Part shown: one piece after another, positions 1,801-57,824 of the stretch
Position numbering within the stretch: the first letter of the stretch is position 1
Layout of the letters: each line of letters begins with the position of its first letter
Assembly: GCF_964194025.1 (NCBI RefSeq)
Contig: NW_027453069.1
Coordinates: 1-64,000 of the forward strand
Direction: 5' to 3'
From: Convolutriloba macropyga
Taxonomy: Eukaryota
Length of the DNA stretch: 64,000 nt
The notes under the pieces: generated by a model
What the model was told of the DNA's origin: nothing
Databases searched by the model: none
The model's input: the letters and a program-made list of their open reading frames with translations, nothing else
Made by a program: the position numbers and the translations under genes

Positions 1801-1840
1801 CCTTCGCCTTCGGCTGCGGCAAGTTCGTGTGGAGTGACAT

Positions 1841-1938
1841 GGGAGATCACAAAGGGCAGCCTCATCTGGCAACCCTCAGTGATTCTGCGCGGCAGGGACT
1901 TGCCACCCATGTAAGACGAAGCCCAGAGTCAAGCAAAA
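1841..1938 (+). repeat. 98-bp direct repeat, copy 1 (B1 of split terminal repeat)
   Basis: gggagatcacaaagggcagc...gagtcaagcaaaa is identical to 2321-2418. Confidence 0.95.
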
Positions 1939-2320: not shown

Positions 2321-2418
2321 GGGAGATCACAAAGGGCAGCCTCATCTGGCAACCCTCAGTGATTCTGCGCGGCAGGGACTTGCCACCCATGTAAGACGAA
2401 GCCCAGAGTCAAGCAAAA
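2321..2418 (+). repeat. 98-bp direct repeat, copy 2 (B2; probable 3' terminus of the element)
   Basis: Exact copy of 1841-1938, 480 bp downstream. Confidence 0.95.
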
Positions 2419-2419
2419 A

Positions 2420-5400
2420 GAAGTAGATCCGCTTCGGCATCGGGATTGTTACAGAGGGCCCCCACGTACCTTCAATCACGGGGAGTCGATTGACGACGGT
2501 AGCGCGGCTCAGTTCCGTTTCGGCAGACACCGAGCTGCCCCCACAGCTTCAAATCGGAGCATGGGAGCCAGGTGTCAAAATGGGTCTCCCGCCTGTTCCT
2601 CGTCCCCAAGAGCAGATTGGGGATGGGGCCCGTCGTAGACCTGCAAGTTTTGATCAGCCACTGCCGTCAGTTCTCCATGAAATTCGACACTCTGTGTTCG
2701 AGAGCCATGTGGACTATGTGTGCTCGGAAGAATGACTACATGATCAGTGTGGACGCAGGATGGGCTCTACGCCATCGGTATCACCCCGAGTTTCGGGATT
2801 TCTTTACCGTCAATTATCGACCCTTAGCTGCCGACCAATGGGTTGATGTGCCCTTCATGTTCCACGCGGTGATCAAGACAGTGGTGGACCACCTGCAGAC
2901 TACCTTGCCGTAGACCTTCGCGAACCTGCTCGCGGCAGCCCGCGGAAACGTGGACACCAGGCACAAGAAGCCAGGATCTTACAGTTTGTAGACTATCTCC
3001 TGTTTCTGAGATAGGAGTTTTCCTGCGGGAGGGCGTGGAGAAGCTGCTGGACGTCGTGCGGCTTCAGGGACATCCGGGGAAGGGAGTCTGGGATGTATAA
3101 CAGTATCAACCCAGTGCATTGAGCACCTCGGTCTCGAGGTGGTGGTGCGGGTGGAGTTTCTGGCGCCGCTATCAAAACTGACGAAGCCAGCAGGCCTAAC
3201 CAAGGAGATCCTGGGCGATCGAAGGTGGTTGTCCGCTTGTCTTCTCGCATCAATGTCGGGCAAGGCACAGTTTGCCATCACCACCAACTCCCTGCCCGCA
3301 CGTTTCTATCTGCCGTAGTTGCCACAGTCCTTTCCGCCAAATCCTCGTGGTTCCCGTGTCCAGCTGACCCGCAGCTGGTACAGGACCTCGAGTTGCAGAG
3401 GCGGGTGCCGAGTCAGTACAACGAACGGCCTATTGATACGGCGGGAGCTGGAGACAGCGTACGTACACTGCGATTCCACGCAGTACGTTTGGGTAGCAAA
3501 CGAGCACCGGGAGGCACGCGGTTTCTTGTACGACACCGACCGTCCGGCACATATTACTTTCAAGGACTGAAAACGGCACGTCATGCCTTCAGAGCGTTCC
3601 TACCTTCTCAGCCCGGTCGCCGGGTACTGCCGCATGTACTGCTGCAGGAGGACGAATAGGCGCCTCCCTCAGTGCTCTCCTACCTAACCTCCCGGAGCCC
3701 GGCCATGATGCCGGAGCTTCGCAACCTGTGTTGGCTGCCGGACACCCACGAGGTCATCCTGATCCCGCATTATATCCGCTCCGAGGCACTCGAGGAATAT
3801 CTGGGCCGATTGGTCCGGGACAGGGACAGCAGCGATTGCCGGCTCAATCCGCGTGTGTTACGGTACCTCGGCACATTGTGGGGCCCGCGCGCCGTGGATT
3901 GTTCACAGCCTCGGAAAATACGCAGCTGTCGCGCTACAACTTCTGGTGGCTGGACCCCTGCACCGAGGCGCTGGACGCTCTCCGGCTGCCAGACCCGTAC
4001 TGGCAATGCGAACCCAACTGCTGCAGCCCTCCCTGGAGCTACCGAGGTCCGGACCTGGCGGCGAGCCTGCAGAGATCAGCGCCGGAGACCACGGTCATCG
4101 CACCTATGTGGAGGGACCGCGCTTGGTTCCAGATGTTTCTCGAGGGGACTACATCGCGTACCCGCCTGCGCACGACCTGTTCTTCCCCGGATGGCGGGGC
4201 AACAAGAGGGGGCCTGGAGCGTCATGGCGTTCCACCTGGCGTAACATCTTGGTGCCAATCACGGGGTGTTACTCGGGGCTCCTCGTCAGCAGAATGCGAC
4301 TGCAGACCTGCCCCACCCCCCGCACCCTGGCAGCACCCAGCAGGTCCCAGCCGTTTCTCACAGTGGGAGGGGTTGGAGCTAAGCCGCTGTGCGAGGCGAT
4401 CATGCCGGCAGCCCTGCCAGACAGGTTTGGCCAGGACCAAATCGGCCAGAGAGTCTTGGACCTGGTGTCTGGATCCCTGGCCTCCTCCTCCTCCCTGTCC
4501 ACTTATGGGTCTTCGTTCCAGGAGTTCCCCTCCAACCAATGAGGGCTGGACCCCTACGCAGTTCAGACGGGGACACGTGTGCTACCTTCCTGGGGGAGGA
4601 GGGTGTTGTTGCTGCTGGCAACCTGCCCTATCTCTCTGCTGTCAACCAATTCCTGGCAGACTATGGCAAAAAATAGTGGCCCTACGGCCACTGGTGGCCG
4701 GAGCCAGGCAAGGCCTAAAACTGCAGCAGGTGACTCATCCCCAATACCACTGTCAGAGTGCCACTGCCTGCAGAGGTGGTGGCCACCCCTGGCGACTGCC
4801 TTCGGAGGCTACGACAGCAGGCAGAAACTCGCCCACCCGGACTCTGCAGCTGTTCAGAGCCAAGCTTGCAGTAGTCTTTGGGTTTGCTTTCTCGGGCCAA
4901 GGCTTCACAGCCAAGGCCCTGAAGGCTGGGGAAGTCCTGGTGGACTCCGACAACATCACTCTGTCCGTTTTATCAACCTGAAGGGCAAGGATGGGGAGCC
5001 AGACCACATCAAGCCCCTGCATATGGGCCGGTGGCAGCGCACCCACAGTTGGTAGCCCTACTTCAGTAGGGCTGGTGGGAAGGGCTGCAGGATGCCTGGT
5101 TGAGGATCGACAGCGACATTGTTGGCTGCTCCCCTCTGATCCGTCCACTGCGTGGTCTGCTGCCACCCTTTCTGGGTGGCTGTCCCTGGCTTAATAAGTG
5201 GACCTCATACAGCCTCAGAAAAGGTACTGCCACACCCATGAACGCAGTGACATTAGTGTGACCCTGCCCACCATTCGTTACTTGGGGGGGGGGGGGGGGC
5301 GGAGGCCAGAGATTCTAGTGTTGTGCATGCCACATACATAGATCCTAGTATCCGCCCCTCCCCTGCAGCCCTCGACATCGTTGGCTCTACCATCAGTCCA
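2420..5400 (+). mobile_element. Degenerate second DIRS-order retrotransposon (RT, RNase H, MTase-like and YR remnants)
   Basis: Fragments across several frames. RT: WVSRLFLVPK..VVDL..KNDYMISVD..HPEFRDFF. RNase H: VHCDST..ARGF..HITF, TSRSPAMMPELR..PHYIRS. MTase-like: RLNP..LWGP..D..SENTQLSRYN..PPW..TVIAP.W..W. YR tail: WTSYSLRKG..YIDP. Many frameshifts and stops. Confidence 0.8.
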
Positions 5401-6065
5401 TTACATTACAGTTAAATGTCCTTTGTGGTCACGAATGAGGTTTGACCGCTGGGGCCTCCGCAGCTGTCAGTTAGCTGTGCTCTGCTTGACCCTACTAAGC
5501 CCTAGTACCTGCAGACACAGACACGGGGCTTGGGCTGCGGCTGCCACCTCCGTCCCTTTTAGCTGCCTGATGATGCTGCCATGGCACTCTGCTTGGCTTG
5601 CAGCTGTCTAAACACAGCTGCACCCGCCTACCCAACCTTTCTTTGCACTGGCCTGGGCATGCTTGACACCAAGCCTCCTGGCTTTGTAACAGCGGTACTA
5701 CTCCCTTTGGCAAACTCTGTACCTACCATCACATGAAGTTAAATGCGCAAGCGAGTCGTTCAGAAACCAGAAAAGTTGCTGCTAGCCGGATAAATCCCTA
5801 TGCAACAACGTCTAGCTGGACACTATGCAGCCATGGGAGCAAAATATGGCATGACTCTGCAGTTCTTTCGCAGTTGGCAAATTGGCGGGCATCGTTACAA
5901 TCCATGAGGGTACAGTATCTCGTGGAGCAGCTTACAACCATAGCAGGCACAACAACACATGCGCAAACCATTCTTATTAGCAAAAATATAGTAGTAAGTC
6001 CACATGAGGTGGTCCTGCTTGCAAAGACAATGACTCATGCTTCGCGGGCCGGAGGTAGGCACAAA

Positions 6066-6345
6066 CTAGTCCATCAACTGATATTCCGTCCATAGATCCA
6101 AAGCCGCCTTGTGAAGATGAAGATGCCGGTCAGCCAAAACATCAAGGTCTTGGTCGTAGCCCCCACCTACCAACCCTGTACCACCAGCGACAATTTCACA
6201 GATTACACTCAGGGTCCAGCTGCTAGTCAGATAATGCAAGCGAAAGAACGGTTTGCGTTCCCTGATTCCCGAATCATGAGTTCTCTGGTGTCATGACCCG
6301 AGCCCCTAGGGACGTGTTGTGCAGAGTGAGAGAGGGAATGAGTGA

Positions 6346-6394
<49 letters not shown>

Positions 6395-9300
6395 TGAGAG
6401 CGAGGTCGACCGTGCAACGTTTAGTACACGACATAGAGACATCAGACCACCTGCTTGCCACCCCAGTGCCGTCAGCATCGGATTCCATGCGGATTGGACC
6501 TCATCACACATATCTGACACTACCAGTAAATGAAACAGTTCATGTATACTCATGCTGGTGATCTGAGTTCTTTCCAGCTTGATGCCCACTCCCCAATGAG
6601 GCATCAACTGGCTACAGCCGGCCTCAATTCTGTAGTGACCAGAAGGTTTCTTTATTGGCTCTCTCATGGCTGAGTTCCCTGCTCACTGGTGACGATCAAG
6701 GAATCTCTAGGGAAGTTCCTGTAACCTCTCATGCGAACAACGCAGGACAACTGCTCTCCTTAAGGCGATTGGGGTACTAGGTCAGTCACCCAACGGCTGG
6801 ATGGAGAAGGAAATCCCTATAATGTACATATAGACAGTGGCAAACACATACCGCTTCCTCCATTCGGTGTTATGCACTACAACTGCCCCAAGGTGGTGAT
6901 GCACCTCACTGCGCCTCGGAACAGGAATGAAATCGAGCTATCCAACTAGTCGCCATAAGAGAGAGACCTGACGAAGAAGGATCCATAATAACAGGCGCTA
7001 CACTAGAGGAATGTCATGAACACCCGAGGGTGGCTGCACCGCAAGTAGTACAGAGCTGAATTATCTATCGCACCGTCGTGCAGCTGTGGGGATAGCAAAA
7101 AAAAACACCAAGGCCAGCTGATGGTTGATGCAGCTGATTGATTGAAGCGATGGAGCGAAAAGGCACAGGAGTTTTCAGGGTGGCTTTGGAATTGTGCTTC
7201 CAACTTACCGGCAACTGGTATGCCCTCTCCCAAGCACAGGTGGAGTACCAACATCTCGCGCTCCCTGAAACCGCACCGCACCCAAGTGAGTGCGACTGTC
7301 ACAAAATCACCTTGGGCCATCAACATTACACGGCTGATGGGAAGGAGCAGGTCGAATTGTACACACGAGCCAGCAATACACCACAAAACGAACGAGAGAG
7401 AATGCAAGGCAGGCCTTTGCGGCTATGGTACATCACTCAGGGACATATGATGGCACGCACAGTACCCTCTGCAGAGCAGGGCAAGAAAAATTGAAAAGAA
7501 TGACAATGTCTGTAGTGGTCAGGAAGGTGGCAAAGGAGCGCACCGCAAACCGCGATCTGTAAGGGAGAGACGGCCTAGCCTGTCGTCCACATGCGGGTCA
7601 ACTCCTGCATCAAACAGCACCAAATCTGGCCGGAAAAATGACAGTGCCGCTGCAAGATGTTCTGACAAGGTAGACAAGTATGCGTGATCGCCAGTGCCAT
7701 CGGGGAGACCGATGTTGCAATCTGCCGGCTGCTTCCGGGCTGGAAAATTGTCCGCACTGTTGTCACACAGCCGCAGAGGAAGAAAAAGTCAAACGGGAAA
7801 CATGCACACCTGCTCTTCCACCATACATGCAAGCCTCACATGTCAAACGATGAATGATCTAGGGACGATACAAATTATCAGACCGCTGCGGTGCTCCCAA
7901 ATCCGCCAGGTTCTAGCACGGCACAGGCATGAACAAGGCAGAGGCACGCATCCCAAGCCTTCACGGATTTCATGCTGTGACGTCAGACATCATCGTGGAC
8001 GGATCTGCACAGGCAACTTTGCGGCCTTGAAGACATAGCGGCTTGGGGGAAACCTGTGGAAGTCGAAAATGTAGACATCCTCGCGTCCTTGAAAAATTCT
8101 GGCTGTGCCGTCCCCTTGATGCACGTCAAGATCAACAATCATGACCCGTTGAACAATGCCATCACGTAGTAATGCCTCAGTCGTCACTGCCAGATCACTG
8201 AAGATCACCAAACGACAGGGCAAGGTTGCAGTAGTAGATGAGCCGCGATCAAGGGACCAAACTGTTATCCGTCAAGCAATGCAGATAGATCTTGTCGGCC
8301 TGAAAAGAGCAGCAGCATTGCAGATGCAGCACCCCGCACTTGATTACGCAGTACCCCGAGCCAGAAGAAGGAAAAGCGTGGTGGGTCCCTCCCGCCGTGT
8401 TCACGGCCAGGCCATGCTGAAGTGCCAGCCGAGCGGTTAAGAGGGTACCTTCACCACAAACATATCGGATTCTCTGAAGTTCATCGCGTGTGAGTGTGAC
8501 AGGCGGCGCGCTGCCAACTGCAGGTCACAGGGCCGCTCACCTGCACATTCCCAAAGTGTCCGCCTAACTAGTGTTTCTGTGTGTATGATCTCATTGAATC
8601 CAATTCTTCTGACAATAGGTGCCGGTAGAGTCCCCGCCAAAAAGTCGTCCAAGTAAGCCTCGCTGTGAACTGCTAAGAGCTCTTCCTTGGTCGGTAAGAT
8701 GTGTGGCTGCACAATCTGAATTGTTTGCAAACAGCTCCAGGTCAGCAAAACATGCACTGCTGCAATTGTGATGCGGCTGAGGCGAAGGGCCTCTTGTTGC
8801 TCTCAACCCTTTGACCATCTGGACACACATCCACCCAATTGGATGCTCTCTTCTCACCATTTCAAGCTCCACAAGCATCACATCACAGGCAGCCGAGGGA
8901 CCAGACAGGACATACAGTGCCATGCACTGACTTCACACCTTGCACTGTCACACATCTCTCACAGGCATCACGCACACAAAGAGACGGCTGCACGGGGTCA
9001 TACAACCCCACCAGCTCACTATGGGACGGCCGACCAGCACACAGATTACCTGCTCAGGCAAAATCAGCTGCTTCGATAGCAACCTGTCATGAATGCGCTT
9101 GAAAACCTGCATTGGAAATGCGTGATTTTCTCGTAGCACAGGTGCAGAATACTCCTGGCAGCAGCAGACAATGCACCACCACCCGGTGAGTACCAGTGGC
9201 CGCCCACAATCCCAATCCAGGATGCCCCCCCCCCCCCCCCCCCCCAAGAGAATGACACTGACTCCCCAACTCATGCATACAGCATTGCACAGTTCAAAAC

Positions 9301-44002: not shown

Positions 44003-45459
44003 CTACTTTCGCATTGCCCACTTGTCGCCAGCAGGGGCAGCACTAGGTGCTGCTGCTGGCGCCCCGGCAAATCCCCCAAACCCTCCACCGGTAGGGGTGG
44101 CAGGATTACTGCTTGCAAATGCACCAAAGCCAGTGCTGGCCCCCGGCGATGCAAATTGCCCAAAGCCTGAGCCTGGGGTTGCAGGGGCTCCAAAGCCGGC
44201 GCCCCCCGGGCTTGCAGGTGCACCAAAGGCTGGTGATGGAGAGGCTGGAGCTCCAAACACAGAGCCGCCCAGTGTCGAGGGTTGCCCGAAACCAGAGCCG
44301 CCGCCAAAGGCCCCGCCGGCAGCTGCAGGTTGCCCAAAACCACCAGGCACAGATGGCTGGCCAAACGCAGACGGTTGTCCAAATGGGGATTGAGCTTCTG
44401 CTGGCTTGGAGGACGCCGCCAGCTGACCAAAGCCTGGAAGAAAACGGATGAGGGCAGGACGTTAGAAGACAGGGGGATCACAGCCTGAAAATCTGGTCAG
44501 CCACAATCTCAGTGAGTGTCACGGACATGTGCTGAATCCGGTCGAACGGTGTCAGACTCAGCCAAGCAAATAGCACATGTCGCTCACCAGGTTGGCCTCC
44601 GAATCCCGAGGAGGAACCGAACGCCGACTGAGCTCCAAACGCGCTGGGCTGTCCAAAACCAGACCCAATGCTTGAGGGAGCCCCGAAAGCGCTCTGGCCA
44701 GACAGGGCTGCTGCGCCGCCAGAAGCAAGGGTGGGCCCTGATGCTTGAGCAGCGCCTGAAAACGATCCGAAAGGACTGGCAGGCAAAGGCAAGCTCAGTC
44801 AGAAAAGCCTGAGCAAACAATTCTGTCAACGCCGGCAGGCACTGACAAGACACTGGGACTCTTGCGGAGGAGGATCTGGCGTCCATTCTGTGTGCGGGGG
44901 ATCTGGCGTCCATTCTGAGTGCAGAGAGAGACAGCCGCTGGATGTGTGTGAGCTCGTTAGTGGGATACCTGGCTTGTGCTGGGGCAGGGGCTGCAAATGC
45001 TGAGGCTGACGATGCAGAAGAGGCTGCGCTCGAAGAACCAAAATTCAAGCCCTTTCCAAACGGACTTGAAGAGGATGCTGCCGTGGTCTGAGAACCGCCG
45101 GAAGATCCGCTGCCCAATCCAAATGCCCCGAATGCCGACGTGCTTGGGCCTGACCAAGCGCATCACAACACACCAAGTCACGCGGTCTACTCCTAGCTTG
45201 GCACACCTCAGGCTGAGATTAGTCTGCCTGTACCACCGAAGAGACCGAAGGCGGACGTTCATGTCTCTCTGCAGAGAGCAGCAGGCATGAGAGGAGAAAG
45301 TTACCGGATGAAGCTAGGTTGCCTCCAAAAGCCGACGCTGATGTCGCTGCAGTTGATGCAAAAGCGAAGGGCGATGAGCCCGCGGCAGAGGCTGCTGATC
45401 CAAACGCTGATGGCTGCATTCGGACGACAACAGCACAGGTTTTAAAGATGGGCCAAGGC

Positions 45460-45494
<35 letters not shown>

Positions 45495-48400
45495 CGATGG
45501 GGATCCAACCGTAGACGACCTGCACTGCCGGGCATGCGGGACTGAGAGCCACTTTCTTCACATGCTAAGAGCAAAACGGCGGTGGTTCACCTGACTCGCT
45601 GGTGTGGCTGCGGACCCAAAACCACTGATGGCAGAGGATCCAAAGATTGATGTCCCACTGCTTGAGGCACTGGATGCTGCGGATGAAGCACCAAATACGG
45701 AGCTGCCCGTGGCTGCGGCCACGCCAAATGATGTGGGAGCGCCAAAGGGGGAGGATGCAGTAGCGCCAGGACTAGTTGGGGCCATGGAAAATGCAGAGGC
45801 TGATGCTGCTGTAGGTGCACCCGTGGACGCATTCAGTCCAAAAGCTGCCATTGTCCCTGAAGTATCAGCTGCCTCTGAGGAAGCAGATGGAGTCCTGCTG
45901 CTCTTGGCTGCTGCTGCAGACGATGAGGTCTGGGCAGCCGTGGCCCCGGCAAACTGGGCCTTGGCTGATGCCATCTGGGCAGCACTGGGCACCGGGGGCA
46001 TGCTGCTCTTTGTTGCTGTCGCAGACGATGAGGTCTGGGCAGCCGTGGCCCCGGCAAACTGGGCCTTGGCTGATGCCATCTGGGCAGCACTGGGCACCGG
46101 GGGCATGCTGCTCTTGGCTGCTGCTGCAGACGATGAGGTCTGGGCAGCCGTGGCCCCGGCAAACTGGGCCTTGGCTGATGCCATCTGGGCAGCACTGGGC
46201 ACCGGGGGCATGCTGCTCTTGGCTGCTGCTCCAGACGATGAGGTCTGGGCAGCCCCGGCCCCGGCAAACTGGGCCTTGGCTGATGCCATCTGGGCAGCAC
46301 TGGGCACCGGGGGCATGCTGCTCTTGGCTGCTGCTGCAGACGATGAGGTCTGGGCAGCCGTGGCCCCGGCAAACTGGGCCTTGGCTGATGCCATCTGGGC
46401 AGCACTGGGCACCGGGGGCATGCTGCTCTTGGCTGCTGCTGCAGACGATGAGGTCTGGGCAGCCGTGGCCCCGGCAAACTGGGCCTTGGCTGATGCCATC
46501 TGGGCGGCACTGGGCACGGGGGGCATGCTGCTCTTGGTTGCTGCTGCAGACGATGAGGTCTGGGCAGCCGTGGCCCCGGCAAACTGGGCCTTGGCTGATG
46601 CCATCTGGGCAGCACTGGGCACCGGGGGCATGCTGCTCTTGGCTGCTGCTGCAGACGATGAGGTCTGGGCAGCCGTGGCCCCAGCAAACTGGGCCTTGGC
46701 TGATGCCATCTGGGCAGCACTGGGCACCGGGGGCATGCTGCTCTTGGCTGCTGCTGCAGACGATGAGGTCTGGGCAGCCGCGGCCCCGGCAAACTGGGCC
46801 TTGGCTGATGCCATCTGGGCGGCACTGGGCACCGGGGGCATGCTGCTCTTGGCTGCTGCCGCAGACGATGAGGTCTGGGCAGCCGTGGCCCCAGCAAACT
46901 GGGCCTTGGCTGATGCCATCTGGGCGACACTGGGCACCGGGGGCATGCTGCTCTTGGCTGCTGCCGCAGACGATGAGGTCTGGGCAGCCGTGGCCCCAGC
47001 AAACTGGGCCTTGGCTGATGCCATCTGGGCGGCACTGGGCACGGGGGGCATGCTGCTCTTGGCTGCTGCTGCAGACGATGAGGTCTGGGCAGCCGCGGCC
47101 CCGGCAAACTGGGCCTTGGCTGATGCCATCTGGGCGGCACTGGGCTCGGGAGGGGTGCTGGTCCAACCAGTCGGGGCACCACCGGTCGGGGTACCACCGA
47201 ACAGCAAAGAGCCACTCGCGGGCGTGGACGAGGGGGCTGCAAGGCCCTTCAGCTCAGATTTAGAAACACTGAAGTTGAATCCCCCAACTGACGCACGGTT
47301 TGCGCTGTGCGACTTCAGAGTTGCCGGAGCAAAGGCCTGGAGGGATTGACTCGAGGATGCCGGCTTGCCATCTGGCTTGGTGTCTTGTTTTGCCAGCATC
47401 CCGCCAAACAGGGAGGAGCCACCACTCTGTGGGGTGATAAGCGGCCGATGATACCAACAGCACAGACAAATTAGAACAATTAGGCTAACACAGACTGTTG
47501 GGGGGCTTTCAGGAATCGGAAGAGTGACGGCAAAGATGTCAAGCCAATGAGACAACACCACTAAATAGCACCGGCCTGATTTGCAAGCAAACTCAAAGGG
47601 TTGCCGCATGTTTCAGGGACTCGTGAAAATCTGCGATTACCTGTGGACTTGGGGACTTTTGAGCCATATGTGCTGAGTCCGGCGCTCTGTTGGCCGACTT
47701 CACAGGGTTCGAGATTGCGGCGCCTGCAGTAAGGCATGAAGTCCATAATTTTCAGAGACTGGTCAGAAAGTGGCTGCCAGATCAGAGTGGGCAAGCGTGT
47801 GGCGGACGCGTGCTTGCCTGGAGGGCTTCGCTGGTGCGGCGAAGGGAAAGGGCCAGGAGAGGTACGAGGTTGGACGGTGGTGACGCGTGGTGCACTCCTG
47901 GCGCCGCTGTACTTAGCCACAGAGCTCAGTACTTGCGAAGCCGCAGCGGATCCCCATGGTGACTGCAGGGGACTCCTCGCACTGGCCGGCGTGCTAATGG
48001 GAGAGGCGCCTGACTTGGCTGGGGTGTACTGCAGCCTTCGCGAGGTGCCCCCAGAGCGTGGAGGAGGGGTTGCCTGAAACTTTGGAGCGAGAGCACGCGC
48101 TGTGCTGTGTGTTCCGATGTCCAAATCGCTCGAACTATAGCCCATGGCCAACTGCTCAGCCTACAAGCACATCCCAGGCAGTGGACGAGTATCGGGGGTT
48201 GTGAGTGGTTGGTGGTGGCCCCTGCGCCTGGCACAGGGCTGCTGCGGCGCGTCAGAGAACTGTCAAGCTGCGGTTCGCCATTGCATCGAAAGGAATCAGA
48301 GTGCTCCCACCTGGTGCAGAAGTTTCCGCAGCTCTGCCTCTTGGCGCCGAACATGATGAGACATGTTGTTGATGCTGTTATATATCGCAGTATAGGACGG

Positions 48401-48631
48401 GAGCGCCGGGCTAAGAGCGCCATGTTCCGCTAGCCCCCATTTCCTGGCGCCCAGCAGGTGCCTTCCCTTAGCTGCGTCCTCTTGGTGCTGCAGCACACTC
48501 TCCAGCTCATCGGCCTAGGGACCGCAGAATCAGCTTCAACCAATCATGACGCCTCGCGGGAATGCAGCAGGAACATGCCAGTCCGTGGGTGCGTGTCACT
48601 CCTCTCTATTCAGCAGCCCTTCTGCAACTGT

Positions 48632-48677
<46 letters not shown>

Positions 48678-51600
48678 CTCTGTGTGTGGTGGTGGAAGCG
48701 TGGGTGGCGTGGGGGGGGGGGGGGGGCTTGATCTAGCCCAGAGCATGTACGTGACCTGAGGAGGGAAATCACATAAGCAGTCAGGGTGTTGCCGACCACC
48801 GCACGTCCAGCCGTACCTTCTGTGCGATATCATCCAGTTGGCGGTTGATCTGAGCTTGCAAAGCTGCCAGGGGCGGCTCCAACGGCAGCTGCTTTTGCAT
48901 TTCATTGTAGTCAGAGCTGGTCACCAGCTTGCGCCGCAGAGTCTCGACGCTTGTGTTTTGCGGGAGATCTGCTTCGACGGTTCGGATTCTCTGCAGGAGT
49001 GGGGCCTGAAGAGCTCAGACCATCACCAGTGCAATTGGATGAATGAATCCAGTAACAACCACGAGGGCCGTCTGCCACACTTTACCTGTTTCACCGCCCG
49101 ATAGGTGTCTGTTGCCTCTGCCACCCCCGTGGAAAGACCCTGTGTCGCTTCTTGCAGTGTCTTTATGCCTGCATGCAAGGCAACATCACATGCACAGTTG
49201 GGGTCGGCTGTGTCACAAGTGCCGGAAAGACACCACAACATCCCCCCCCCCTCGTTCTCGGTGTGGAAGAAAAGTGTTGGGGACATCATACCTCCGTCAC
49301 TCAGTTTCGAGGCAAGAACCTCAGCTTCAGACGAGCAGCGGCACACCTCCTGAAGAGCTTTCAGGAAGTCGGACTCCATTGAAACAACGTTTGCGTCCTG
49401 GGAAAAGTTCACACAGTGACACGCAGCGACTCCGGTCAGAGATCTGGGCAGAGACTTTAACTGCTGTGTCCCACACGACATCGGGGGATCGTTTCGCTGC
49501 GGCGCTGCCAAGGGCGACAAAGGGGTGGGCATCGATACCTGATTAGAGAGCTTGGCTGGCAGCCGCTCTGGCTCGGCAACCTTGGGAGTGATGCCAGCAG
49601 GGAATGTCGCCACGGGTCTGAACGCATCAGCCGGTTGAGCTTCGTATGCTGGGAGCTTGGCTGCGCGACAACGGGTCCGCATGCCAGGAAAAAGTGTCAG
49701 TGGCTTTCAAGAGGGCTCGAAACACACCTTCGTAGGACGCAGATCCCAGGGTCAGGGGAAAGCGGGGCGGAGGTGAGGAGGTCCACATGCTCTGGAGGAG
49801 GCTGCACGGTGACTCACTTCGAGATACAGAGAACTCCGGGGCTGGCAGTCCGGCTTTGCCGGCGGAATCGGTGCCCACAGCTGCATCCGATTTTGAAACG
49901 GCCATTGGGGAAAAACCAGCTTGTGCCGCATTCCCCTGCTGAGACTGCTGATACCCTGTAAACCCAAAGGTCGGGGCCGCGGAAGGGGCCGCCGTGGGAG
50001 CTCCAGCGCCGGCCTGCTGACCGAAACCCTGGGACAGGCGCACAGCACAGCAGTTTTGTCCACCTCCTGCAGATCAGATGACCGAGCAGGAGTGCAACAG
50101 CTAGGGAGAATGCAACGGGGGAAGGCAAGGAAATCGCACCTGCAGCCCACTGCCGCCTGGTGGGACAAACAGTGATCCTGCAGCACAGCAAAGGAATCGC
50201 TGAATCTTCCGGGGACGCAAAGCATTCCAGCGAAGGAAACGCAGATTGTGATGTCCGGTAGCCCGCGGGAATGCGATTCTCATCCAGCATGAGGGTGGGC
50301 CATGGTGGGATTCGAGCTCACCGGTGCTTCCACCACGGAACTGTTGCTCCGGCTCGTCCTCGCCGCCCGTGTCGGAACTTTCCGTGCCGTCGTCGTCGTC
50401 GTCATCGTCAGATGGCAGCCCTGCAGCTTTCGCGGCCTGCGTTAAGGCCTCCAGCCCGCCAGCAGCAGGGGCGCATGCGACCGCCGGTTTTGACGGCAGC
50501 GGCGCCGGCTTAGGGAGAGGCTGCGGCAGGACCACCACCGATTCCAAAGCCTTGATGCTGCCAAAGGTATACAGACGAAGCTTGGCATCTGATGTCGCTA
50601 CTATCAGGATTGGAGATGCGGGGAGGCTCTTGCGCTCCTCTCCCACCGGGTCATTCACAGGGACCTGCAAGGGAGCAACCGCAAGACCACACCAGGCATG
50701 GGACGGGACGGTGAATGTGGCAAAAGAACAGGAGCGTTCCTTCACGGAGAAGAACCGGCAGAGCGTACAGTCGCGTCTGAGCAGGAGGGGGATTTGGATT
50801 TTCTAGGTGGTTTGGGTGGAGCGGAACGGCGTGGGCTGTGACCTGTGAGCCACTCGCGGTGTCCAATGCCATCCCGACAACATAGTTGGGCTCGTCCTCG
50901 CCAGCTGCAAACGGTATCCGAATGGCTGTACTCTCGTCGTCGACGAACACCTCGGTGACGTCGTTCTCAGAGACCCCTGCCACACCAGCGCCGCAGTCAC
51001 ACACCCAGAGCAAACACGTTTTTACCCCCGAGAGCCCGGAGAAACCCAGGAAGGAGACGGGGAGGGGTTGCAAGCCTCACCGATGATTTTGATGTGTTGG
51101 TCGTCGCTTTTTCGGTGAGCAGCCATGAGGATTTCCCAGGCTGGCAGCCATGTGCTGTGGAGGTACGGACCACTCATTGGCGGGGCAGCTTCGACCTAGG
51201 CATGGTTGTCGCGGGGGACGACCGCGTGTTAGTGACACTCTTTCCCGTGGAGAAAATGGCGCCAGGGGGGACTGGTGTGCGTGTGCGGCGGCACCGTCTC
51301 TGCCAGGGCAGTCAGTCTGTGTGGGCCCAACCGCTAGAGGCCACTGATGAAAAGGAAGCGGACCAACGCACAGTGCGGGCACTGGCGGAGGGGAGCCCAG
51401 GTGCGTTGGGAGGATAGACAGGCAAGCGTCTCCAAGGGAGTGAAACCTTCCTAGAAGAGATGAATGATTCAACATGCTGTGAAGGGCGCAAACCTCGGCT
51501 GAGGGATAGGCAAGGGTCTGGGTCAGCTCAAAGTCATCCCAGGTGTCGGTCCACCGCAGCAGCAAGAGAGGGGCGCCTCCGTCCTCGTCGTCGCTTTCGT

Positions 51601-54600
51601 CCAACATCATCGTTCCCACAAGCATTGACCGTGGGGTGAGCCACTTGAGCGTCTCGACGATGAGAGGGACGCCGTCTTCCTCCGCTGCGAGTCCAATCAA
51701 AGCCCCACACAACACCAGCGGGAGCACACTTTAGAGTTGGTCCCGGTTGCTTGAGCACTTGAGGCAAATCGGCTGCGCTCCTTCACTCCCTGTCACAGCG
51801 TTTGCGAGGGGTGGCTCTGACCTTCAGTGCAGGTTACTCTCAGTGTGACGTCTGGCGTGCTTCCTGGCTGGTCATCGACGGGCATGAGACGCAGCTGTTC
51901 GCCCATAGCAATGGCTATGCACTTCCCGTCAGGCGACCACGCTGCAGCATCCACTGACTGCGCAATCTCCTGCAACGGCCGCGGCACCCACAGTATCGTC
52001 GGCGAACCGATGTACAAGGCGCAGGAGTATGCAACACAACAGGGACTTCTCTCCATGTGAGTATGCAAGAGAAACCTCGCTTCAGCAACACTTGCATTGC
52101 CGGCACAACGGCCTGTAGACGGCAGCCGCCCGCACCTCAACATCCCCAGACACAGAGCCACAGAGCAGTGTGCCGTCGTCCGTGGTGATCAGGAATCTTT
52201 GAGATTTGCTGGGATCCCAATACACCTGCGTGAGGGAGACATGCGGGCAAGCATGGACGTGTGAGACAGGCACCCTCCATATGGCATACAGTCAAAAGGA
52301 CAAAAATGCGAACGAGCAGTGCTTCACCTGGCGCACGAGGCTTTCCGTTGAGATGGAGCACAAAGGCTCCAGAGTGCCGGAGTGCAAGAGCGAGTAAAGG
52401 CGGAAGAGGCGCAGCCCACACGAGGTGTCGGCAACTGCAATCGTTTCTTCGTCTGGTGACAGCGCAACACTTGTGAACTGCCCTTTGGCGACAGTCACCC
52501 CGCAGCTTGCGGGGTCCTGCGCCTGCAGCTCACTGCAACAAACGACCAATGGGTGAGGAGAAGTCACCAAGGCGTTCGCCGACTAACACTTGCCATGGCG
52601 TCGTAAGCCATCACAAATGGCTGTGCATGCAATCAGCGCGTCCAGCAGGAGCAGATCTGCACACGAGCAGTGGCGGAACGCCAACCGATCGAAGACAGCA
52701 GGGAGTCAGAGTGTGCTGTCGGTGTCCAGACATGTCTGTCGCCAGACGGCATACGATGCACCTACCTGCCGTCCTCCACGTCCACTTTGGCTACGGCTCC
52801 CAAGATTTTGCTTGTCCAGAGTGCGTATACCCCTGCACGGCATCAACGCGTGGGCAGGTGCCGTCAGCGCAGCCAATTGCTGTTGCACCTCTGTGCGTGC
52901 TTCCCTCGAGGCAAAACCCGCGCAGTACCGTGGGGTCAGCTGTGAAGGACGCACCTTTTGGGTCGATGTATATCGTGACGCCATACATGTTTGATACGGC
53001 AAGCACTTGGAGGCTGGCAAGATCACTGTAGGCCGGCAGATTGGAGAGCTGGCTTTCACTCGTGAAGCACACCTCCCCGAGCCGCTTGAAGAACAAGCCG
53101 CTGTCTGTGTCTTGCTCCGCATCTGCCAAAGCTGGAGAAACTGGAGGGTCAGCTGAAGGCTTTGGAGCTGCGAGCAGACGTATTGCAGTGGGCGATGCAG
53201 GCGCAGTCGGCATCCCAAAGCTGAACGTGCCTGACGAACGAGCAGCAGCGGCAGGAGCGCCGCCCTTTGAGTCCTCCACATACTTCGCAGCAGCGTCCGT
53301 GGCAGCCTCCGAGCTGGCCTTGTTGGCCTGCAGGAAGGAAGCGCCCCACCCTGAGGCCGCTGGAGCTGTGCTGCTTGCCGCCTCATGGCCTGCAGATGCT
53401 GCTGGGAGCCCAAAGCTGAATGCCCCTGTTGAGGGGGGAGCAGCGGAAGCTCCACCCTTTGTCTCCTCGACGTACTTGGCAGCCGCGTCCGTTGCGGCCT
53501 CCGAGCTCGCCTTGTTGGCCTGCAGGAAGGAAGCGCCCCACCCTGAGGCCACTGGAGCTGTGCTGCTTGCCGCCTCATGGCCTGCAGATGCTGCTGGGAG
53601 CCCAAAGCTGAATGCCCCTGTTGAGGGGGGAGCAGCGGAAGCTCCGCCCTTTGTCTCCTCGACGTACTTGGCAGCCGCGTCCGTTGCGGCCTCCGAGCTG
53701 GCCTTGTTGGCCTGAAGGAACGATGCACCCCACCCTGAAGCTGCTGGAGCTGTGCTGCTTGCTGCCTCGCTGCCCGCAGGGGCTGCAGGTGCAGTTGGCA
53801 TCCCAAAGCTGAACGTCCCAGAAGCCGGGGGGGGCGCAGGAGCGCCGCCCTTTGCCTCCTCCACGTACTTGGCAGCGGCGTCTGTAGCCGCCTCCGAGCT
53901 GGCCTTGTTGGCCTGCAAGAAGGCACTGCCCCACCCTGAGGCTGGTGGAGCTGTGCTGCTGGCAGCTTCGTTGCCCGCAGGTGCTGCTGGGAGCCCAAAG
54001 CTGAATGCCCCTGACGAAGGAGCCGCAGCAGGAGCGCCGCCCTTTGCCTCCTCCACGTACTTGGCAGCGGCGTCTGTAGCCGCCTCCGAGCTTGCCTTGT
54101 TGGCCTGCAAGAAGGCACTGCCCCACCCTGAGGCTGCTGGAGCTGCACTGCTGGCAGCCTCATTGCCCGCAGGTGCTGTTGGAAGCCCAAAGCTGAATGC
54201 CCCTGACGAAGGAGCCGCAGCAGCAGGAGCGCCGCCCTTTGCCTCCTCCACGTACTTGGCAGCGGCGTCCGTAGCCGCCTCCGAGCTTGCCTTGTTGGCC
54301 TGAAGGAAGGATGCACCCCACCCTGAAGCTGCTGGAGCGGCACTGCTTGGTGCATCGTCGCCTGCAGATGCTGCTGGGACCCCAAAGCTGAAGGCCCCTG
54401 GCGAAGGAGCCGCAACAGCAGGAGCGCCGCCCTTTGCCTCCTCCACGTACTTGGCAGCCGCGTCCGTAGCCGCCTCCGAGCTTGCCTTGTTGGCCTGCAG
54501 GAAGGAAGCGCCCCATCCGGATTGCACCTAGACATGGAGAGTCTTGTCAGTGAGGCATCTCAACAAGCCTAACACTGACAACTGATGGCCACAGGGCCAT

Positions 54601-57600
54601 CCAACTTACCGGAGCACCGGCTGCTCCTCCTGCTGGGGATACTGTTTCTGCGGACCATTGGCAAAACGCCTTCACGTTAGTGTGAAAGCCTGGAATGTTC
54701 TGCAAGTGGCAAGCACACCTCACTCCCCTCGTGATTGGAGTGTCAAATTGCCGGAATCGCTGCTGAGCAAGGGAGCGGAACCGAGGGCTCATTACCGCTA
54801 TCTGATCCTTCATCAGAGAAACTGTCGTCATCGCCGTCTGGAAGGCCGGCAGCCTTCGCAGCCGCTGTAAGGGCATCGAGGCCTGTTGCTGGAGGCTCGC
54901 TGGCTGCTTCAGAGTGAAGAACGGGGGTCGGAACCACCGGCACAGGCAGAGGCTGGGCGTTTTGCACGATTGACTGCGTCTCCTTCATGCTACCAAATGT
55001 GAACAAGCGAAGTTTGGCATCCGATGTTGCGATGATCAGGATTGGGGAAGCGGGCAGGGTTCGATGCTCCTCACCCACGGGGTCTGTCACGAGCACCTGC
55101 GGGTTTGGGAGCAAACATAGACAGGGCGGAGGTGGGTCCAACCGAGCCTTGGGATGCTTGAGCCCAGTGCAGAAGAGCTCTCCACAACGTGAGCCTAGCA
55201 TCTCAGGGTTCGCAGTCGAGCGGTGGAGGGGGGTGGGGGGGGGGGGGGGGGGGGGTTGTCTAGTTTGCATTACCCCGGAGCCGCTGGCAGTGTCGCATGC
55301 AAGACCAACTACAAAATTGTCCTCTTCGCCTGCTGCAAACGGGAGGCGGATGGCGGTGCGCTCGTCATCGACCACGACCTCGGTGACGCCTCGACCTGAC
55401 AACCCTGTGGCAGCACGGAATTGTCAGTGGGCAGGCACCGACAGCTTTTCAAATCAGCCCATGCATATGGTACCAGACAGTGATTCAGACAAGGCAAGAC
55501 ACCACTGCTGGTCGCATTCATTGAAGAGGGGGGCGAACCGACTAGCTTCATGTGCTGGTCACTGCTCTTCCGGTGAGAAGCCACAAGAACCTTCCAGGCG
55601 GCCAGCCAGCAGCTGTGAAGGTATGGCCCACTGGACGCCGGGGCCGCATCGACCTGGCACAGGGGCACGCGCCGTGGATGTGGAAAGGCACCATGGGGGC
55701 AGAGGGTGTTGACATCGGGCAGTGGTACAAAGTTCGTAACAGGAGGACAGTGTGTGCAGCAACGTCGGAGGCGGCGAATTGCACGTCACAGGCAAATGGC
55801 ATTGGCGCCGTATTGGCAAAGTGTGCAGCAATTCATGCGAAGCTGTTGATCGCCACGATCAGGGCACCGGACCCAGAGCTTCCGTGAGTGCACACACCTC
55901 TGCCATGGGGTACGCAAGGATCTGTGTGAGCTCAGCCTTATCCCAGCTGCCCTTGCAGCTCAGCACCATCAGCGGCGCGGGCCCATCCTCCTCCCCGTCA
56001 TCATCCAGCATGGAGGTCCCCACAAGGATCTCCGTATCGGTGAGCCATGTGACCGTGTCAATGTCCAGAGGCACTCCATCCTCCTCCGCTGGCCCGAGCG
56101 CCACATCCAAAGCATGCAGAGTCAATCCACAGCCGTTCTGTAGCCATTGAGTAGCCTCACATGGAAGCCGGAAGTTTCATTGCGTCCCAACTGCCGCTGC
56201 ATCACACCAATGGAATGCATGGCAGGGGCCTGACCTTCCGGGCAGGTGATTCTCAGAGCAACCCCACGCTCCAGCACCCGTGCATCCCCAGGAGCAGTCA
56301 TGATCTGCAGCTGATCACTTGTACCCACAGCAATGCTCTGCCCATCCGGCGACCATGCAGCAGCATCCACCGACTGCAAGAGCTCCTGAAGCAGGGGAGG
56401 GGCGGACGTGTGAGCAGCAACCCGGGACCCCTCTCTCACTCGCTATCTTATGGGTGGCAGCAGCATTCTGTGTGCCATTGAGAAATCCCTCAGCACACAG
56501 AGTCTCTCTCTCTCTCTCTGTGCAGCTCGAAGGTGCATCAGCCACTTGCAGGCCTGCCTATCTACCGCCCGACCAGCCTCGCTGCTGTGCTTCTGCCACA
56601 CGACGGCGCCGGTCCGCCACAACAGTTTGTGGCAAGGAGAGGGTTGGGCAATAGTCTCAGCGGGCGAATGCCGCAGGTCTCACCTCCACTTTGCCTGACA
56701 GTGAACCGATCGAGAGGCTGCCATTGGTGGTGGTGAACAAGAACCGGTTGGAGTTGCTTGGATCCCAACAAACCTGGACCCAAGGCCGACCGCAGCATGG
56801 GTAGGTGAGATGGCGCTCAGTAGAGGTAGATTGTTGCGGAATCAGTACGGGGGCCTAACGAGTCACAGACGGATGGACAGCGCATGGACACGACAGGACA
56901 GGGCAGGGAGTAGCTAGTGCCAAGGCAGCCGAGGGGAGTGCAGATCAGAGCATTGAAGGTGCAACCGAGGGAACCGGGAGCTTCAGAGTCGGCTGCAGTG
57001 CTGACAACTATCGCAGTCACACGGCATGCACCTGTCGAACCAAACTCGTAGTGGGGATCGACAAGAACGGTTCTAAGTCGCCACCGTTCAGTACACTGTG
57101 GAGGTGGTGGAACCGCAGGGCCCCGGCCCTGTCCACGACTGCTACCGCCTGCTCATCAGGGGAAAGAGCCGCACTGGCGAAGTGCCCTTTCACGATGCGC
57201 ACCCCGTGCTGAGCGGGGTTGAGAGGCTGGAGCTCACTGCAGCAGCAGCAGAAGCACGGAGGCGTGTCAGGTCAGGAAACAGGCGGGTAAATCCTAGCCC
57301 AACGCTGCTGCCCGTTCATGACGTCAGCTGCAAGGGCGAGACGTTTTAGTGGTGCTGTGAGGCGGGAAACCCCTGATGGTATTGTAGGGGGGAGATGGCC
57401 GGAGAGAGGTGCTTCAGAGCGAACGAGAGAGGAGAGGGGGGGGGGGGGGGGGGGGACCTTCCGTCCTCCACATCCACTTTCTTTGCTGCGGCGACAGCTG
57501 TTTGAGTCCAAAGCACGTAAAGTCCTGGCAGGCACGAACAGGTCAGCCAACAGATGCTCGTTGGGTCTCAGCTGGAGCAGACACATGCGCCGGGCCAGCT

Positions 57601-57824
57601 GGGTGCATGGGGGGATGCGCAGTACCTTCGGGGTCGATGAAGACAGTGACTCCATACTTGTTTGACACTGCCAAAACTTGGAGGGCACCCACGTCCCGGT
57701 AGGCGGTCAGGCTGGGCAGGTGGCTCTCCCTGGTGAAGCACACCTCACCGAGGCGGGTGAAGAAGAAGCCGCTGTCCAGATCTTCCTCGGCGTCCGCCAC
57801 AGGGACAGATCTCAAGGCTGACAT
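44003..57824 (-). CDS. NUP214: Nup214/Nup159-like nucleoporin with duplicated N-terminal beta-propeller, central coiled coil, tandem repeats and C-terminal FG domain; multi-exon
   Basis: Propeller copy 1 at 57824-~54800 and copy 2 at ~53130-50330 (LAVSNxYG, ALSPDE, AAAWSPDG, PILIxATSDAKLRL). Coiled coil at ~49400-48300. SxFG/GFG repeats at 45850-44003, ending WAMRK*. Confidence 0.75.
45895..47150 (-). repeat. 12 x 105-bp coding tandem repeat (35 aa: SSMPPVPSAAQMASAKAQFAGATAAQTSSSAAAAK)
   Basis: Near-identical units with 105-bp period, in ORF 45558..47609. Confidence 0.95.
48630..48672. repeat. (GT)n microsatellite in intron
   Basis: Visible gtgtgt run. Confidence 0.9.
53200..54520 (-). repeat. 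7 x ~195-bp coding tandem repeat (GWGASFLQANKASSEAATDAAAKYVEE..FSFG)
   Basis: Seven GWG..FLQANK units in ORF 52791..54527, each followed by one FSFG. Confidence 0.95.

What the first reader, a model, noticed from the sequence alone, without database searches (positions are those of the whole stretch)
50330..57824. Nup214-like nucleoporin with two tandem beta-propellers in one reading frame
Seen: two diverged copies of the N-terminal domain with matching exon structure (e.g. DSGxFFxRLGEVCFT..LAVSNxYG..IDP; QSVDAAAWSPDG; AEEDGVPL; LPASPILIxATSDAKLRL). An in-frame splice path links copy 1 (donor at 54795) through a 38-bp exon (54647-54610) to the exon starting at 54527. That exon runs without a stop through the GWG repeats into copy 2. 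Introns have diverged while exons are conserved, which suggests both copies are under selection. Known: Nup214/Nup159 normally has one propeller, which docks the mRNA export helicase DDX19/Dbp5. Inference: a nucleoporin with two helicase-docking modules or one neofunctionalised propeller.
Basis: partly seen in the sequence, partly recalled or inferred. Interest (0 to 1): 0.7.

Follow-up and report, generated by a model that had tools for sequence, protein, structure and literature searches.

The report
Algal Nup214 nucleoporin with two propellers
A green-algal gene for the nuclear-pore protein Nup214 carries two copies of the propeller domain that normally docks the mRNA-export helicase; both copies sit in one reading frame, both are kept by selection, and a related alga makes them as a single mRNA.

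Summary

- **Gene model:** on the minus strand, 57824 to 50140 reads as 20 GT-AG exons, 4392 nt, with no stop. It encodes propeller 1, the 38-bp exon, a fusion exon and propeller 2. The fusion exon holds seven 64-67-aa GWG/FSFG units that run straight into propeller 2.
- **Duplication:** exon sizes and phases match between the copies. They share 62.5% amino-acid identity, dN/dS is about 0.18, and the introns are randomised.
- **Transcript evidence:** no RNA run exists for this organism; the four public runs are DNA. A related alga's intron-free 7917-nt transcript contig (JGI 3300017263) encodes one 2417-aa protein with the same layout. It is colinear with the window from 57812 to 44006.
- **Family:** that protein passes Pfam PF16755 twice. 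An algal profile hits Nup214 N-terminal domains in the PDB at E 5e-36. Both AlphaFold models rank Nup214 and Nup159 first.
- **Timing:** a tree and an AU test (p 0.002) place the duplication before the two species split.
- **Elsewhere:** gene models from Volvox, Gonium and Pleodorina also carry two propellers, apparently independently.

Whether both propellers bind the helicase was not tested. I rate this a new variant of a known kind.

The parts
54796..57824 (-). Propeller 1 (copy 1). Nine exons: 57824-57626 (ATG at 57824), 57524-57458, 57236-57032, 56773-56684, 56385-56235, 56088-55898, 55653-55539, 55404-55274, 55096-54796. About 483 aa, ending in an acidic tail.
   Evidence: All splice sites are GT-AG and the frame is open. 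The exons map head to tail on the relative's cDNA L012 at 598-1968. Identity to P0003 propeller 1 is 61.6% with dN/dS 0.19. 57824 is the first in-frame ATG after an upstream stop.
54610..54647 (-). 38-bp exon E9, encoding (E)TVSPAGGAAGAP. It restores the frame between propeller 1 and the linker exon.
   Evidence: Acceptor is ccgcag and donor is gtaagt; it enters in phase 1 and leaves in phase 0. A 38-bp exon of the same phase follows copy 2 at 50177-50140. That second exon's peptide is present in the relative's mRNA. The peptide of this exon itself was not found in the mRNA because it is too short and diverged.
52955..54527 (-). Fusion exon of 1573 bp. It holds seven tandem 64-67-aa units (GWG..FLQANKASSEAAT..AKYVEE..FSFG), starting at 54518, 54323, 54128, 53936, 53735, 53543 and 53351. 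It then runs directly into the first exon of propeller 2 (53129-52955). There is no ATG at the position matching copy 1's start.
   Evidence: ORF 52791..54527. TRF reports a 192-bp period with 6.7 copies. Unit lengths differ only by multiples of 3. Variable columns by codon position are 23/11/43, and pairwise codon differences are 287 synonymous against 245 nonsynonymous. The 30-aa core is 80% identical to the linker units of P0003.
50322..52832 (-). Rest of propeller 2 (copy 2). Exons: 52832-52766, 52532-52328, 52225-52136, 51969-51822, 51684-51494, 51195-51081, 50976-50843, 50664-50322.
   Evidence: All GT-AG, with the same sizes and phases as copy 1. The exons map head to tail on L012 at 3115-4317. 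Identity to P0003 propeller 2 is 69.9% with dN/dS 0.13. It forms a clade with P0003 p2 at 100/98 support.
50140..50177 (-). Second 38-bp exon E9', encoding (G)SLFVPPGGSGLQ.
   Evidence: Acceptor is tgctgcag and donor is gtgcga. It matches LSFVPPSGS of P0003, at L012 4420-4440.
47816..50028 (-). Exon starting GFGQQAGAGAP..TFGFTG at 50028, followed by the middle part of the protein. Downstream exons were not modelled one by one.
   Evidence: The acceptor gtcccag at 50028 is phase-compatible. P0003 aa 1157-1702 map colinearly to 50667-47816.
45558..47609 (-). Large exon region with 13 tandem 35-aa units (SAAQMASAKAQFAGATAAQTSSSAAAAKSSMPPVP), followed by FG motifs.
   Evidence: ORF 45558..47609. 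P0003 carries six related units, visible in its sequence.
44003..44804 (-). C-terminal FG-repeat exons (GFGQP, SVFGAP, AFGAP and similar), ending ...PAGDKWAMRK with the stop at 44005-44003.
   Evidence: ORFs 44478..44792 and 44003..44350. P0003 aa 2203-2417 map here and end with the same ten residues.

Best explanation
This is one gene, on the minus strand from about 57824 to 44003, on an algal contig. It encodes a Nup214/Nup159-family cytoplasmic-filament nucleoporin whose N-terminal beta-propeller has been duplicated inside the gene.

**Layout.** The order is: propeller 1, acidic tail, 38-bp exon, seven GWG/FSFG repeat units, propeller 2, acidic tail, 38-bp exon, a short FG stretch, the middle region, thirteen 35-aa repeats, and C-terminal FG repeats.

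**Origin.** An intragenic tandem duplication copied the unit running from about codon 8 of exon 1 through the 38-bp exon. It left one start codon, upstream of copy 1, and one 3' end. Copy 2's first exon is fused in frame to the linker exon. The duplication predates the split between this alga and the alga that produced transcript L012. Both propellers have been under purifying selection since.

[quoted passage not shown] It presents two helicase-docking (Dbp5/DDX19-type) propellers on a flexible, FG-bearing tether. This either doubles the docking sites per protomer or frees one propeller for a partly different partner. The strongly conserved 30-aa GWG core of the linker is probably a binding motif in its own right.
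For: **Gene model**
- 20 GT-AG exons, 4392 nt, no stop, with paired exon sizes and phases.
- Copy 2 has no start codon at the homologous place, and the linker frame reads straight into it.
- The linker is coding in that frame: indels are multiples of 3, and variation is heaviest at third codon positions, 23/11/43.

**Selection on both copies**
- dN/dS is 0.18 between the two copies.
- It is 0.19 for the copy 1 orthologue pair and 0.13 for the copy 2 orthologue pair.
- The introns tested are randomised.
- Each copy keeps 49-51 of the 63 residues conserved across the family.

**Single mRNA in a relative**
- L012 is 7917 nt with one ORF at 589-7842 encoding 2417 aa, and has in-frame stops upstream of its ATG.
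- The window's exons abut on it with no intron.
- It is colinear with the window from 57812 to 44006.

**Family membership**
- PF16755 at 72.7 bits with 2 stretches.
- PDB Nup214 N-terminal domains at E 5e-36 to 8e-32, against about 5e-13 for the next WD40 protein.
- The top six Foldseek hits for both models are the Nup214 and Nup159 N-terminal domains, TM 0.58-0.78.
- FG repeats lie at the C-terminus.

**Timing of the duplication**
- Window copy 2 groups with P0003 p2 at 100/98 support.
- The AU test rejects window copy 1 plus copy 2 as a clade, p 0.0021.

**DNA is real**
- Contigs from two samples cover both copies and both edges of the array.
- The observed indels are in frame or fall in an intron.
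Against: - No RNA from the window's own organism. All four runs that hold the stretch are DNA contigs, so the junction from copy 1 through the 38-bp exon to the linker is inferred here.
- The peptide of copy 1's 38-bp exon is not recognisably conserved in the relative's mRNA. It shares only 15 of 38 nt with its paralogue.
- A weaker in-frame donor exists (TCG|gttccg, about 15 nt downstream of the 54795 donor). There is also an ATG just inside intron 8, in frame with the 38-bp exon. An alternative junction or an internal-start isoform therefore cannot be excluded (my reading of the sequence).
- If the 54795 donor were not used, copy 1 would end 17 codons later at a stop at 54745-54743.
- L012 is a short-read transcript assembly that passes through repeats. 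On its own it could be chimeric.
- Polymorphisms in the laid stretch are 7 synonymous against 13 nonsynonymous, with similar density in introns. This gives no population-level sign of constraint, though the sample is small.
- Helicase binding was not tested for either propeller.
Confidence: 0.85

Rival explanations
1. These are two adjacent genes. Gene A makes a propeller-only protein from copy 1, ending at the stop at 54745-54743 when the 54795 donor is not used. Gene B starts from an internal promoter, with an ATG in intron 8 or the Met in an FSFGM unit. Gene B makes the linker, propeller 2 and the rest of the protein.
For: There is a stop 17 codons past the donor. There is an in-frame ATG at about 54792 ahead of the 38-bp exon, and there are Met residues in units 4 and 7 of the linker. 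No RNA from this organism is available.
Against: - The related alga's mRNA carries both propellers in one ORF, with stops upstream of its first ATG.
- Linker units 1-3, upstream of any internal Met, are kept in frame and show mainly third-position variation.
- Copy 2 lacks the start codon that copy 1 has.
- The 38-bp exon and its phase are kept after both copies.
- A propeller-only Nup214 fragment would lack the region that anchors the family at the pore (established knowledge of Nup159/Nup214).
Confidence: 0.08
2. One of the two propellers, most likely copy 1, is an unused and decaying relic that is skipped or not translated. Under this reading the protein effectively has one propeller.
For: Copy 1 evolves somewhat faster. 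Its end branches are 0.32 and 0.30, against 0.18 and 0.25 for copy 2. Polymorphisms in copy 1 exons are 5 synonymous against 9 nonsynonymous.
Against: - Across about 38% amino-acid divergence, copy 1 has no stop, no frameshift and no lost splice site.
- dN/dS is 0.19 between the copy 1 orthologues of two species.
- Copy 1 keeps 50 of 63 family-conserved residues, the same as copy 2.
- Copy 1 is the N-terminus of the ORF in the relative's mRNA.
Confidence: 0.04
3. The arrangement is an assembly artefact, either here (haplotypes or paralogues stitched in tandem) or in the relative's transcript contig (a chimera made through shared repeats).
For: Short-read contigs break inside the 192-bp array, and no single contig spans from copy 1 to copy 2. 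L012 is a short-read assembly.
Against: - The copies differ at 37% of residues, so they are not alleles.
- Contigs from two samples join copy 1 to the first repeat unit (54460-56490) and the last units to copy 2 (52250-53874).
- The same order and frame are found independently in genomic DNA here and in cDNA of another species.
- No other copy exists in the assembly.
Confidence: 0.02

Closest known systems
Human NUP214 (CAN) and yeast Nup159
   Same: The N-terminal seven-bladed propeller belongs to the PF16755 family. The best sequence and fold matches are PDB 7tdz, 3fmo, 2oit, 3fhc, 3rrm and 1xip. The overall order is the same: propeller, then middle region, then C-terminal FG repeats.
   Different: The algal protein has two propellers instead of one. 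They are separated by a repeated GWG/FSFG linker, and the second propeller is internal. There is also an extra array of 35-aa repeats. Sequence identity to human NUP214 in the structural alignment is only 16-18%. Helicase binding is not shown here.
P0003, the 2417-aa product of transcript contig Ga0186258_100039 (JGI/IMG sample 3300017263), unnamed
   Same: This is the orthologue. It has the same two-propeller layout, the same linker motif, the same 38-bp-exon peptide after propeller 2, and the same last ten residues. It is colinear with the window.
   Different: It comes from a different species, with 62-70% identity in the propellers. It has 3 linker units rather than 7, with extra FSFG sub-repeats, and 6 rather than 13 of the 35-aa units.
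Volvocaceae hypothetical proteins: Gonium pectorale KXZ47877.1, Volvox carteri XP_002954255.1, Pleodorina starrii PLESTB_000348000
   Same: These are green-algal Nup214 homologues whose gene models also carry two full propellers. In Volvox and Pleodorina the linker between them bears FG motifs.
   Different: Their duplication is separate on the tree. Within a species the two copies are 95-99% identical, against 62-75% between species, so they are either recently duplicated or homogenised by gene conversion. They are gene predictions and I checked no transcript for them. They lack the GWG core motif.
Single-propeller green-algal Nup214 homologues (Myrmecia bisecta KAK9815356.1, Haematococcus lacustris, Helicosporidium, Prasinococcus)
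   Same: They belong to the same family and share the same conserved residues.
   Different: They have one propeller, which is the usual state. The related genomic contig L006 (SRR26965953) also shows one unit with its own upstream region. That unit branches outside the duplication.

Membership tests
Nup214/Nup159 nucleoporins | N-terminal beta-propeller that matches Pfam PF16755 (Beta-prop_NUP159_NUP214) above its curated cut-off | tested here: met
   The orthologue P0003 scores 72.7 bits against a cut-off of 29.6, with two stretches. The window's propellers are 62-70% identical to it and colinear with it. Taken exon by exon, the window itself gave no Pfam hit. It was also not picked up in the six-frame search of the assembly, as expected for exons of 22-114 aa.
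Nup214/Nup159 nucleoporins | Sequence-profile relationship to solved Nup214 N-terminal domains that stands clear of generic WD40 proteins | tested here: met
   The profile of 18 algal propellers (A2) hits Xenopus and human Nup214 at E 5.1e-36 to 7.9e-32 over the whole domain. The next hit, WDR24, is at 4.5e-13.
Nup214/Nup159 nucleoporins | Fold of the Nup214/Nup159 N-terminal propeller | tested here: met
   The AlphaFold models of P0003 propeller 1 (pLDDT 84, pTM 0.85) and propeller 2 (pLDDT 82, pTM 0.84) both rank 3fmo, 2oit, 3fmp, 3fhc, 3rrm_C and 1xip as hits 1-6. E-values are 1e-24 to 1e-16, and generic WD40 proteins start near 1e-12. The models are of the orthologue, not of the window's own protein.
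Nup214/Nup159 nucleoporins | C-terminal FG-repeat region | tested here: met
   ORFs 44003..44350 and 44478..44792 are dense in GFGQP, SVFGAP and AFGAP motifs, and the 45558..47609 ORF ends in FG motifs. They are colinear with the FG tail of P0003.
Nup214/Nup159 nucleoporins | Central coiled-coil segment that anchors the protein with Nup88/Nup82 and Nup62/Nsp1 | not tested
   A non-repetitive middle region exists, with P0003 aa 1360-1702 mapping to window 49658-47816. I ran no coiled-coil prediction or partner analysis.
Nup214/Nup159 nucleoporins | Propeller binds the DEAD-box helicase Dbp5/DDX19 | not testable with these tools
   Only indirect evidence is available. Both copies keep 50 or 51 of 63 family-conserved residues. 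In the loop before the NYVVG strand, the residue that the HMM aligns with human D359 is D in the copy 1 lineage and P or Y in the copy 2 lineage. The importance of D359 is recalled from memory. I could not verify it because the paper is not held.
Nup214/Nup159 nucleoporins | One propeller per polypeptide (the usual architecture) | tested here: not met
   There are two propellers in one frame here and in the relative's mRNA. This is a departure in architecture, not a failure of homology.

The most novel reading that the evidence does not exclude
Doubling of the helicase-docking propeller of Nup214 may be a recurrent, selected innovation in green algae. It would have arisen once in this lineage, where the copies are old and diverged, and again in Volvocaceae, where the copies stay near-identical. 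Under this reading the two propellers have divided their labour. The copy 2 lineage has changed the loop residue that aligns with human D359. The highly conserved GWG-FLQANKASSEAAT-AKYVEE core of the linker would then be a separate multivalent binding platform for a partner not yet identified. If Chlamydomonas shares the Volvocaceae form, this could also contribute to the unusually large Nup159-complex density reported on its pore (PMC6006428).
Probability: 0.25. Interest if true: 0.75.

Novelty: new variant of a known kind. Interest (0 to 1): 0.58.

Why it matters
[quoted passage not shown] One propeller per protein is the rule in every studied system.

A form with two propellers is conserved across species here, and it appears again independently in Volvocaceae. 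This suggests that the number of helicase docks per pore can be tuned by evolution.

It also offers a natural experiment. One can compare the two propellers for helicase binding and ask what the conserved linker motif recruits. I found no description of this architecture in the paper library. The public Volvocaceae proteins that have it are filed as hypothetical.

Tried and rejected
- **Pfam on ten single-exon ORFs:** nothing specific.
- **phmmer of single exons, and of each whole P0003 propeller, against PDB sequences:** no Nup214 hit. Only the 18-sequence profile worked.
- **PF16755 against the whole assembly:** it found a low-GC, metazoan-like Nup214 on another contig and not the window. 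The Pfam test on the window itself is therefore only indirect.
- **Search for RNA runs:** only DNA contigs were found, so there are no transcript data for this organism.
- **Idea that the linker units derive from the exon that follows copy 2 (GFGQQ...TFGFTG):** the alignment score of 57 is within the shuffled range of 54 +/- 9, so I rejected it as unsupported.
- **My first 8-exon model:** it missed the 67-bp exon and placed exon 2's acceptor wrongly. I corrected it with P0003. The per-exon dN/dS table used the older model, and supersedes it.
- **Literature check of the Nup214-DDX19 contact residues:** it failed because the papers are not held.
- **Search for Chlamydomonas reinhardtii's own protein with the Gonium query:** not found within the length range allowed.
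- **The joined step:** the joined (spliced) window protein was never sent to any search, family or structure tool. Searches used single exons or natural uninterrupted ORFs by reference, an alignment of those (A1), or database proteins. The joined coding sequence was built only inside local scripts. There it served the frame check, dN/dS, the conserved-residue count and the tree.
- **Operator limits:** The read-laying run used 5951 letters.
Full report
**What is there**

On the minus strand, the ORF translations show two sets of the same peptide blocks. The blocks include DSGxFFxRLGEVCFT, LAVSNxYG, QSVDAAAWSPDG, AEEDGVPL and LPASPILIxATSDAKLRL.
- One set lies at 57.8-54.8 kb and the other at 53.1-50.3 kb.
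- A 192-bp tandem repeat lies between them.
- blastn and tblastn of one region against the other align them block by block.
- Downstream on the same strand lie a 13 x 35-aa repeat and dense FG repeats. The frame ends ...PAGDKWAMRK with a stop at 44003.

**Gene model**

I enumerated phase-compatible GT/AG pairs and kept those at homologous positions in both copies.
- A full-length relative, found later, showed that I had missed a 67-bp exon and misplaced the acceptor of exon 2. I corrected both.
- The final model has 20 exons from the ATG at 57824 to 50140. It is 4392 nt long, a multiple of three, has no stop, and every intron is GT-AG.
- Paired exon sizes are 67/67, 205/205, 90/90, 151/148, 191/191, 115/115, 131/134, 301/343 and 38/38.
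- A second 38-bp exon of the same phase follows copy 2 at 50177-50140, after an intron of 144 bp against 148 bp for copy 1.
- The exon from 54527 holds seven units of 64-67 aa. It continues with no stop into copy 2's first exon, which has no ATG where copy 1 has its start.

**Is it coding and selected?**

- Between the copies there are 467 aligned codons with 62.5% identity. pN is 0.23 against pS 0.66, dN/dS is about 0.18, and differences by codon position are 122/92/260.
- The seven introns tested are no more alike than shuffled sequence.
- In the linker, unit lengths differ by whole codons. Variable columns fall 23/11/43 by codon position in the frame that reads into copy 2, and pairwise codon differences are 287 synonymous against 245 nonsynonymous. 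Other frames of this GC-rich repeat are also open, so openness alone proves nothing. The codon-position pattern is the evidence.

**Reads**

The only public runs that hold the stretch are DNA: four runs from two samples in one study.
- Their contigs run through introns and show no splice joints. There is therefore no transcript evidence for this organism.
- The contigs do confirm each copy and both edges of the array (54460-56490, and 52250-53304 joined to 53689-53874).
- One allele lacks 384 bp, exactly two units. A 6-bp insertion at 54807 duplicates a Asp-Glu pair in frame. A 1-bp indel at 57609 lies in intron 1.
- SNPs in the laid stretch are 7 synonymous, 13 nonsynonymous and 16 intronic. 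This is too few to show constraint either way.

**Relatives**

A word search with the natural ORF that spans exons 7-8 of copy 1 found one Logan ORF.
- Its 3.4-kb genomic contig L006 holds one complete unit with introns and its own upstream region. There is no FSFG repeat within 515 bp upstream.
- I aligned that window ORF with the single exons of copy 2 and L006 (A1) and ran the exhaustive profile search. It returned 95 proteins.
- The best, P0003, has 2417 aa and two matched stretches. It is encoded on a 7917-nt JGI contig, L012, as one uninterrupted ORF at 589-7842 with in-frame stops upstream of its ATG.
- The window's exons map on L012 end to end, leaving gaps of only the split codons. 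This holds at every intron position that could be mapped, so L012 is a spliced mRNA.
- P0003 is colinear with the window from 57812 to 44006 and ends with the same ten residues.
- Its layout is propeller (1-461), three GWG units with FSFG motifs, propeller (777-1244), and then the peptide LSFVPPSGS, which matches the second 38-bp exon. After that come the middle region, 35-aa repeats and the FG tail.
- So a related alga makes both propellers in a single mRNA.

**Family**

- P0003 passes PF16755 (Beta-prop_NUP159_NUP214) at 72.7 bits with two stretches.
- A profile of 18 green-algal propellers hits Nup214 N-terminal domains in the PDB at E 5e-36 to 8e-32 over the full domain. The next WD40 protein is at about 5e-13.
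- The AlphaFold models of both P0003 propellers (pLDDT 84 and 82) have the Nup214 and Nup159 N-terminal domains as hits 1-6.
- The window's exons are too short to score alone. Their family assignment rests on 62-70% identity to P0003.

**Timing**

- In a maximum-likelihood tree of 26 propellers, window copy 2 groups with P0003 propeller 2 at 100/98 support.
- The four copies form a clade at 99/96, and the L006 unit is their sister at 98/100.
- Forcing the window's two copies together is rejected (AU p 0.0021). Copy 1 groups with P0003 propeller 1 in the best tree at 77/62.
- The duplication therefore predates the split of the two species and seems to postdate the L006 lineage.
- Orthologue dN/dS is 0.19 for copy 1 and 0.13 for copy 2. 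Each copy keeps 49-51 of 63 family-conserved residues. Neither copy is decaying.

**Elsewhere**

- Gene models from Gonium, Volvox and Pleodorina also have two propellers.
- Within each species the two copies are 95-99% identical, against 62-75% between species. This points to a separate duplication kept uniform by gene conversion, or to repeated recent duplications.
- Haematococcus, Myrmecia, Helicosporidium and Prasinococcus have one propeller.
- I found no paper describing a two-propeller Nup214.

**Function (inference)**

By homology, the protein should sit on the cytoplasmic side of the pore and its propellers should dock the Dbp5/DDX19 helicase (PMC5998080, read). Whether both do so is untested.
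- One small difference stands out. The loop residue that the profile aligns with human D359 is Asp in the copy 1 lineage and Pro or Tyr in the copy 2 lineage. That column is variable among algae, and the role of D359 is from memory only.
- The 30-aa core of the linker unit is 80% identical between the two species, which is better conserved than the propellers. This suggests it is a binding motif.

**Limits**

- The junction from copy 1 to the linker is not shown by RNA in this organism.
- A weaker alternative donor and an internal ATG exist.
- L012 is a short-read assembly.
- The structure models are of the orthologue.
- The spliced window protein was not sent to any search tool. Searches went exon by exon or with natural ORFs by reference. 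The joined sequence was used only in local scripts.

**Verdict**

It is a real and, as far as I could find, undescribed architectural variant of a well-known nucleoporin.

Noticed in passing
window 54518-53160 (seven linker units); P0003 aa 495, 584, 705: The 30-aa core GWG[AS][SA]FLQANKASSEAATxAxAK[YH][VI]EE is 80% identical (73-87%) between the window and the related alga. That is better conserved than the propellers (62-70%). It looks like a repeated binding motif rather than a spacer. The GWG recalls Argonaute-hook GW motifs, but that is from memory and untested.
   Followed up: partly
P0006 (Gonium KXZ47877.1), P0011 (Volvox XP_002954255.1), P0103 (Pleodorina PLESTB_000348000): Volvocaceae Nup214 gene models each hold two propellers. 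Within a species they are 95-99% identical, against 62-75% between species. This points to concerted evolution or repeated recent duplication. In Volvox and Pleodorina the linker between them carries FG motifs.
   Followed up: partly
G000:C2:11228378-11229304 (L007) against window contig C3973: The assembly is 1.18 Gb with contigs over 70 Mb and GC of 0.38-0.41. It has its own metazoan-like Nup214, scoring 88.9 bits on PF16755. The 85-kb window contig has GC 0.56 and is algal, so the alga appears to ride along in an animal's assembly.
   Followed up: partly
window 53304-53689, 54807 and 57609: The DNA runs show an allele lacking 384 bp (exactly two linker units) and an in-frame 6-bp duplication that adds Asp-Glu to the acidic tail of propeller 1. 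They also show a 1-bp difference from the assembly that lies in intron 1.
   Followed up: yes
window 45558-47609, minus strand: A second in-gene tandem array holds 13 units of 35 aa (SAAQMASAKAQFAGATAAQTSSSAAAAKSSMPPVP). The related alga's mRNA has six such units. The array is open in several frames, and its role is unknown.
   Followed up: no
L006 (Logan SRR26965953 contig, 3386 bp): A more distant relative's genomic contig holds one complete propeller unit with the same intron positions and its own upstream region. It branches outside the duplication, so that lineage may have the single-propeller ancestral form. The contig ends about 370 bp after the acidic tail.
   Followed up: partly
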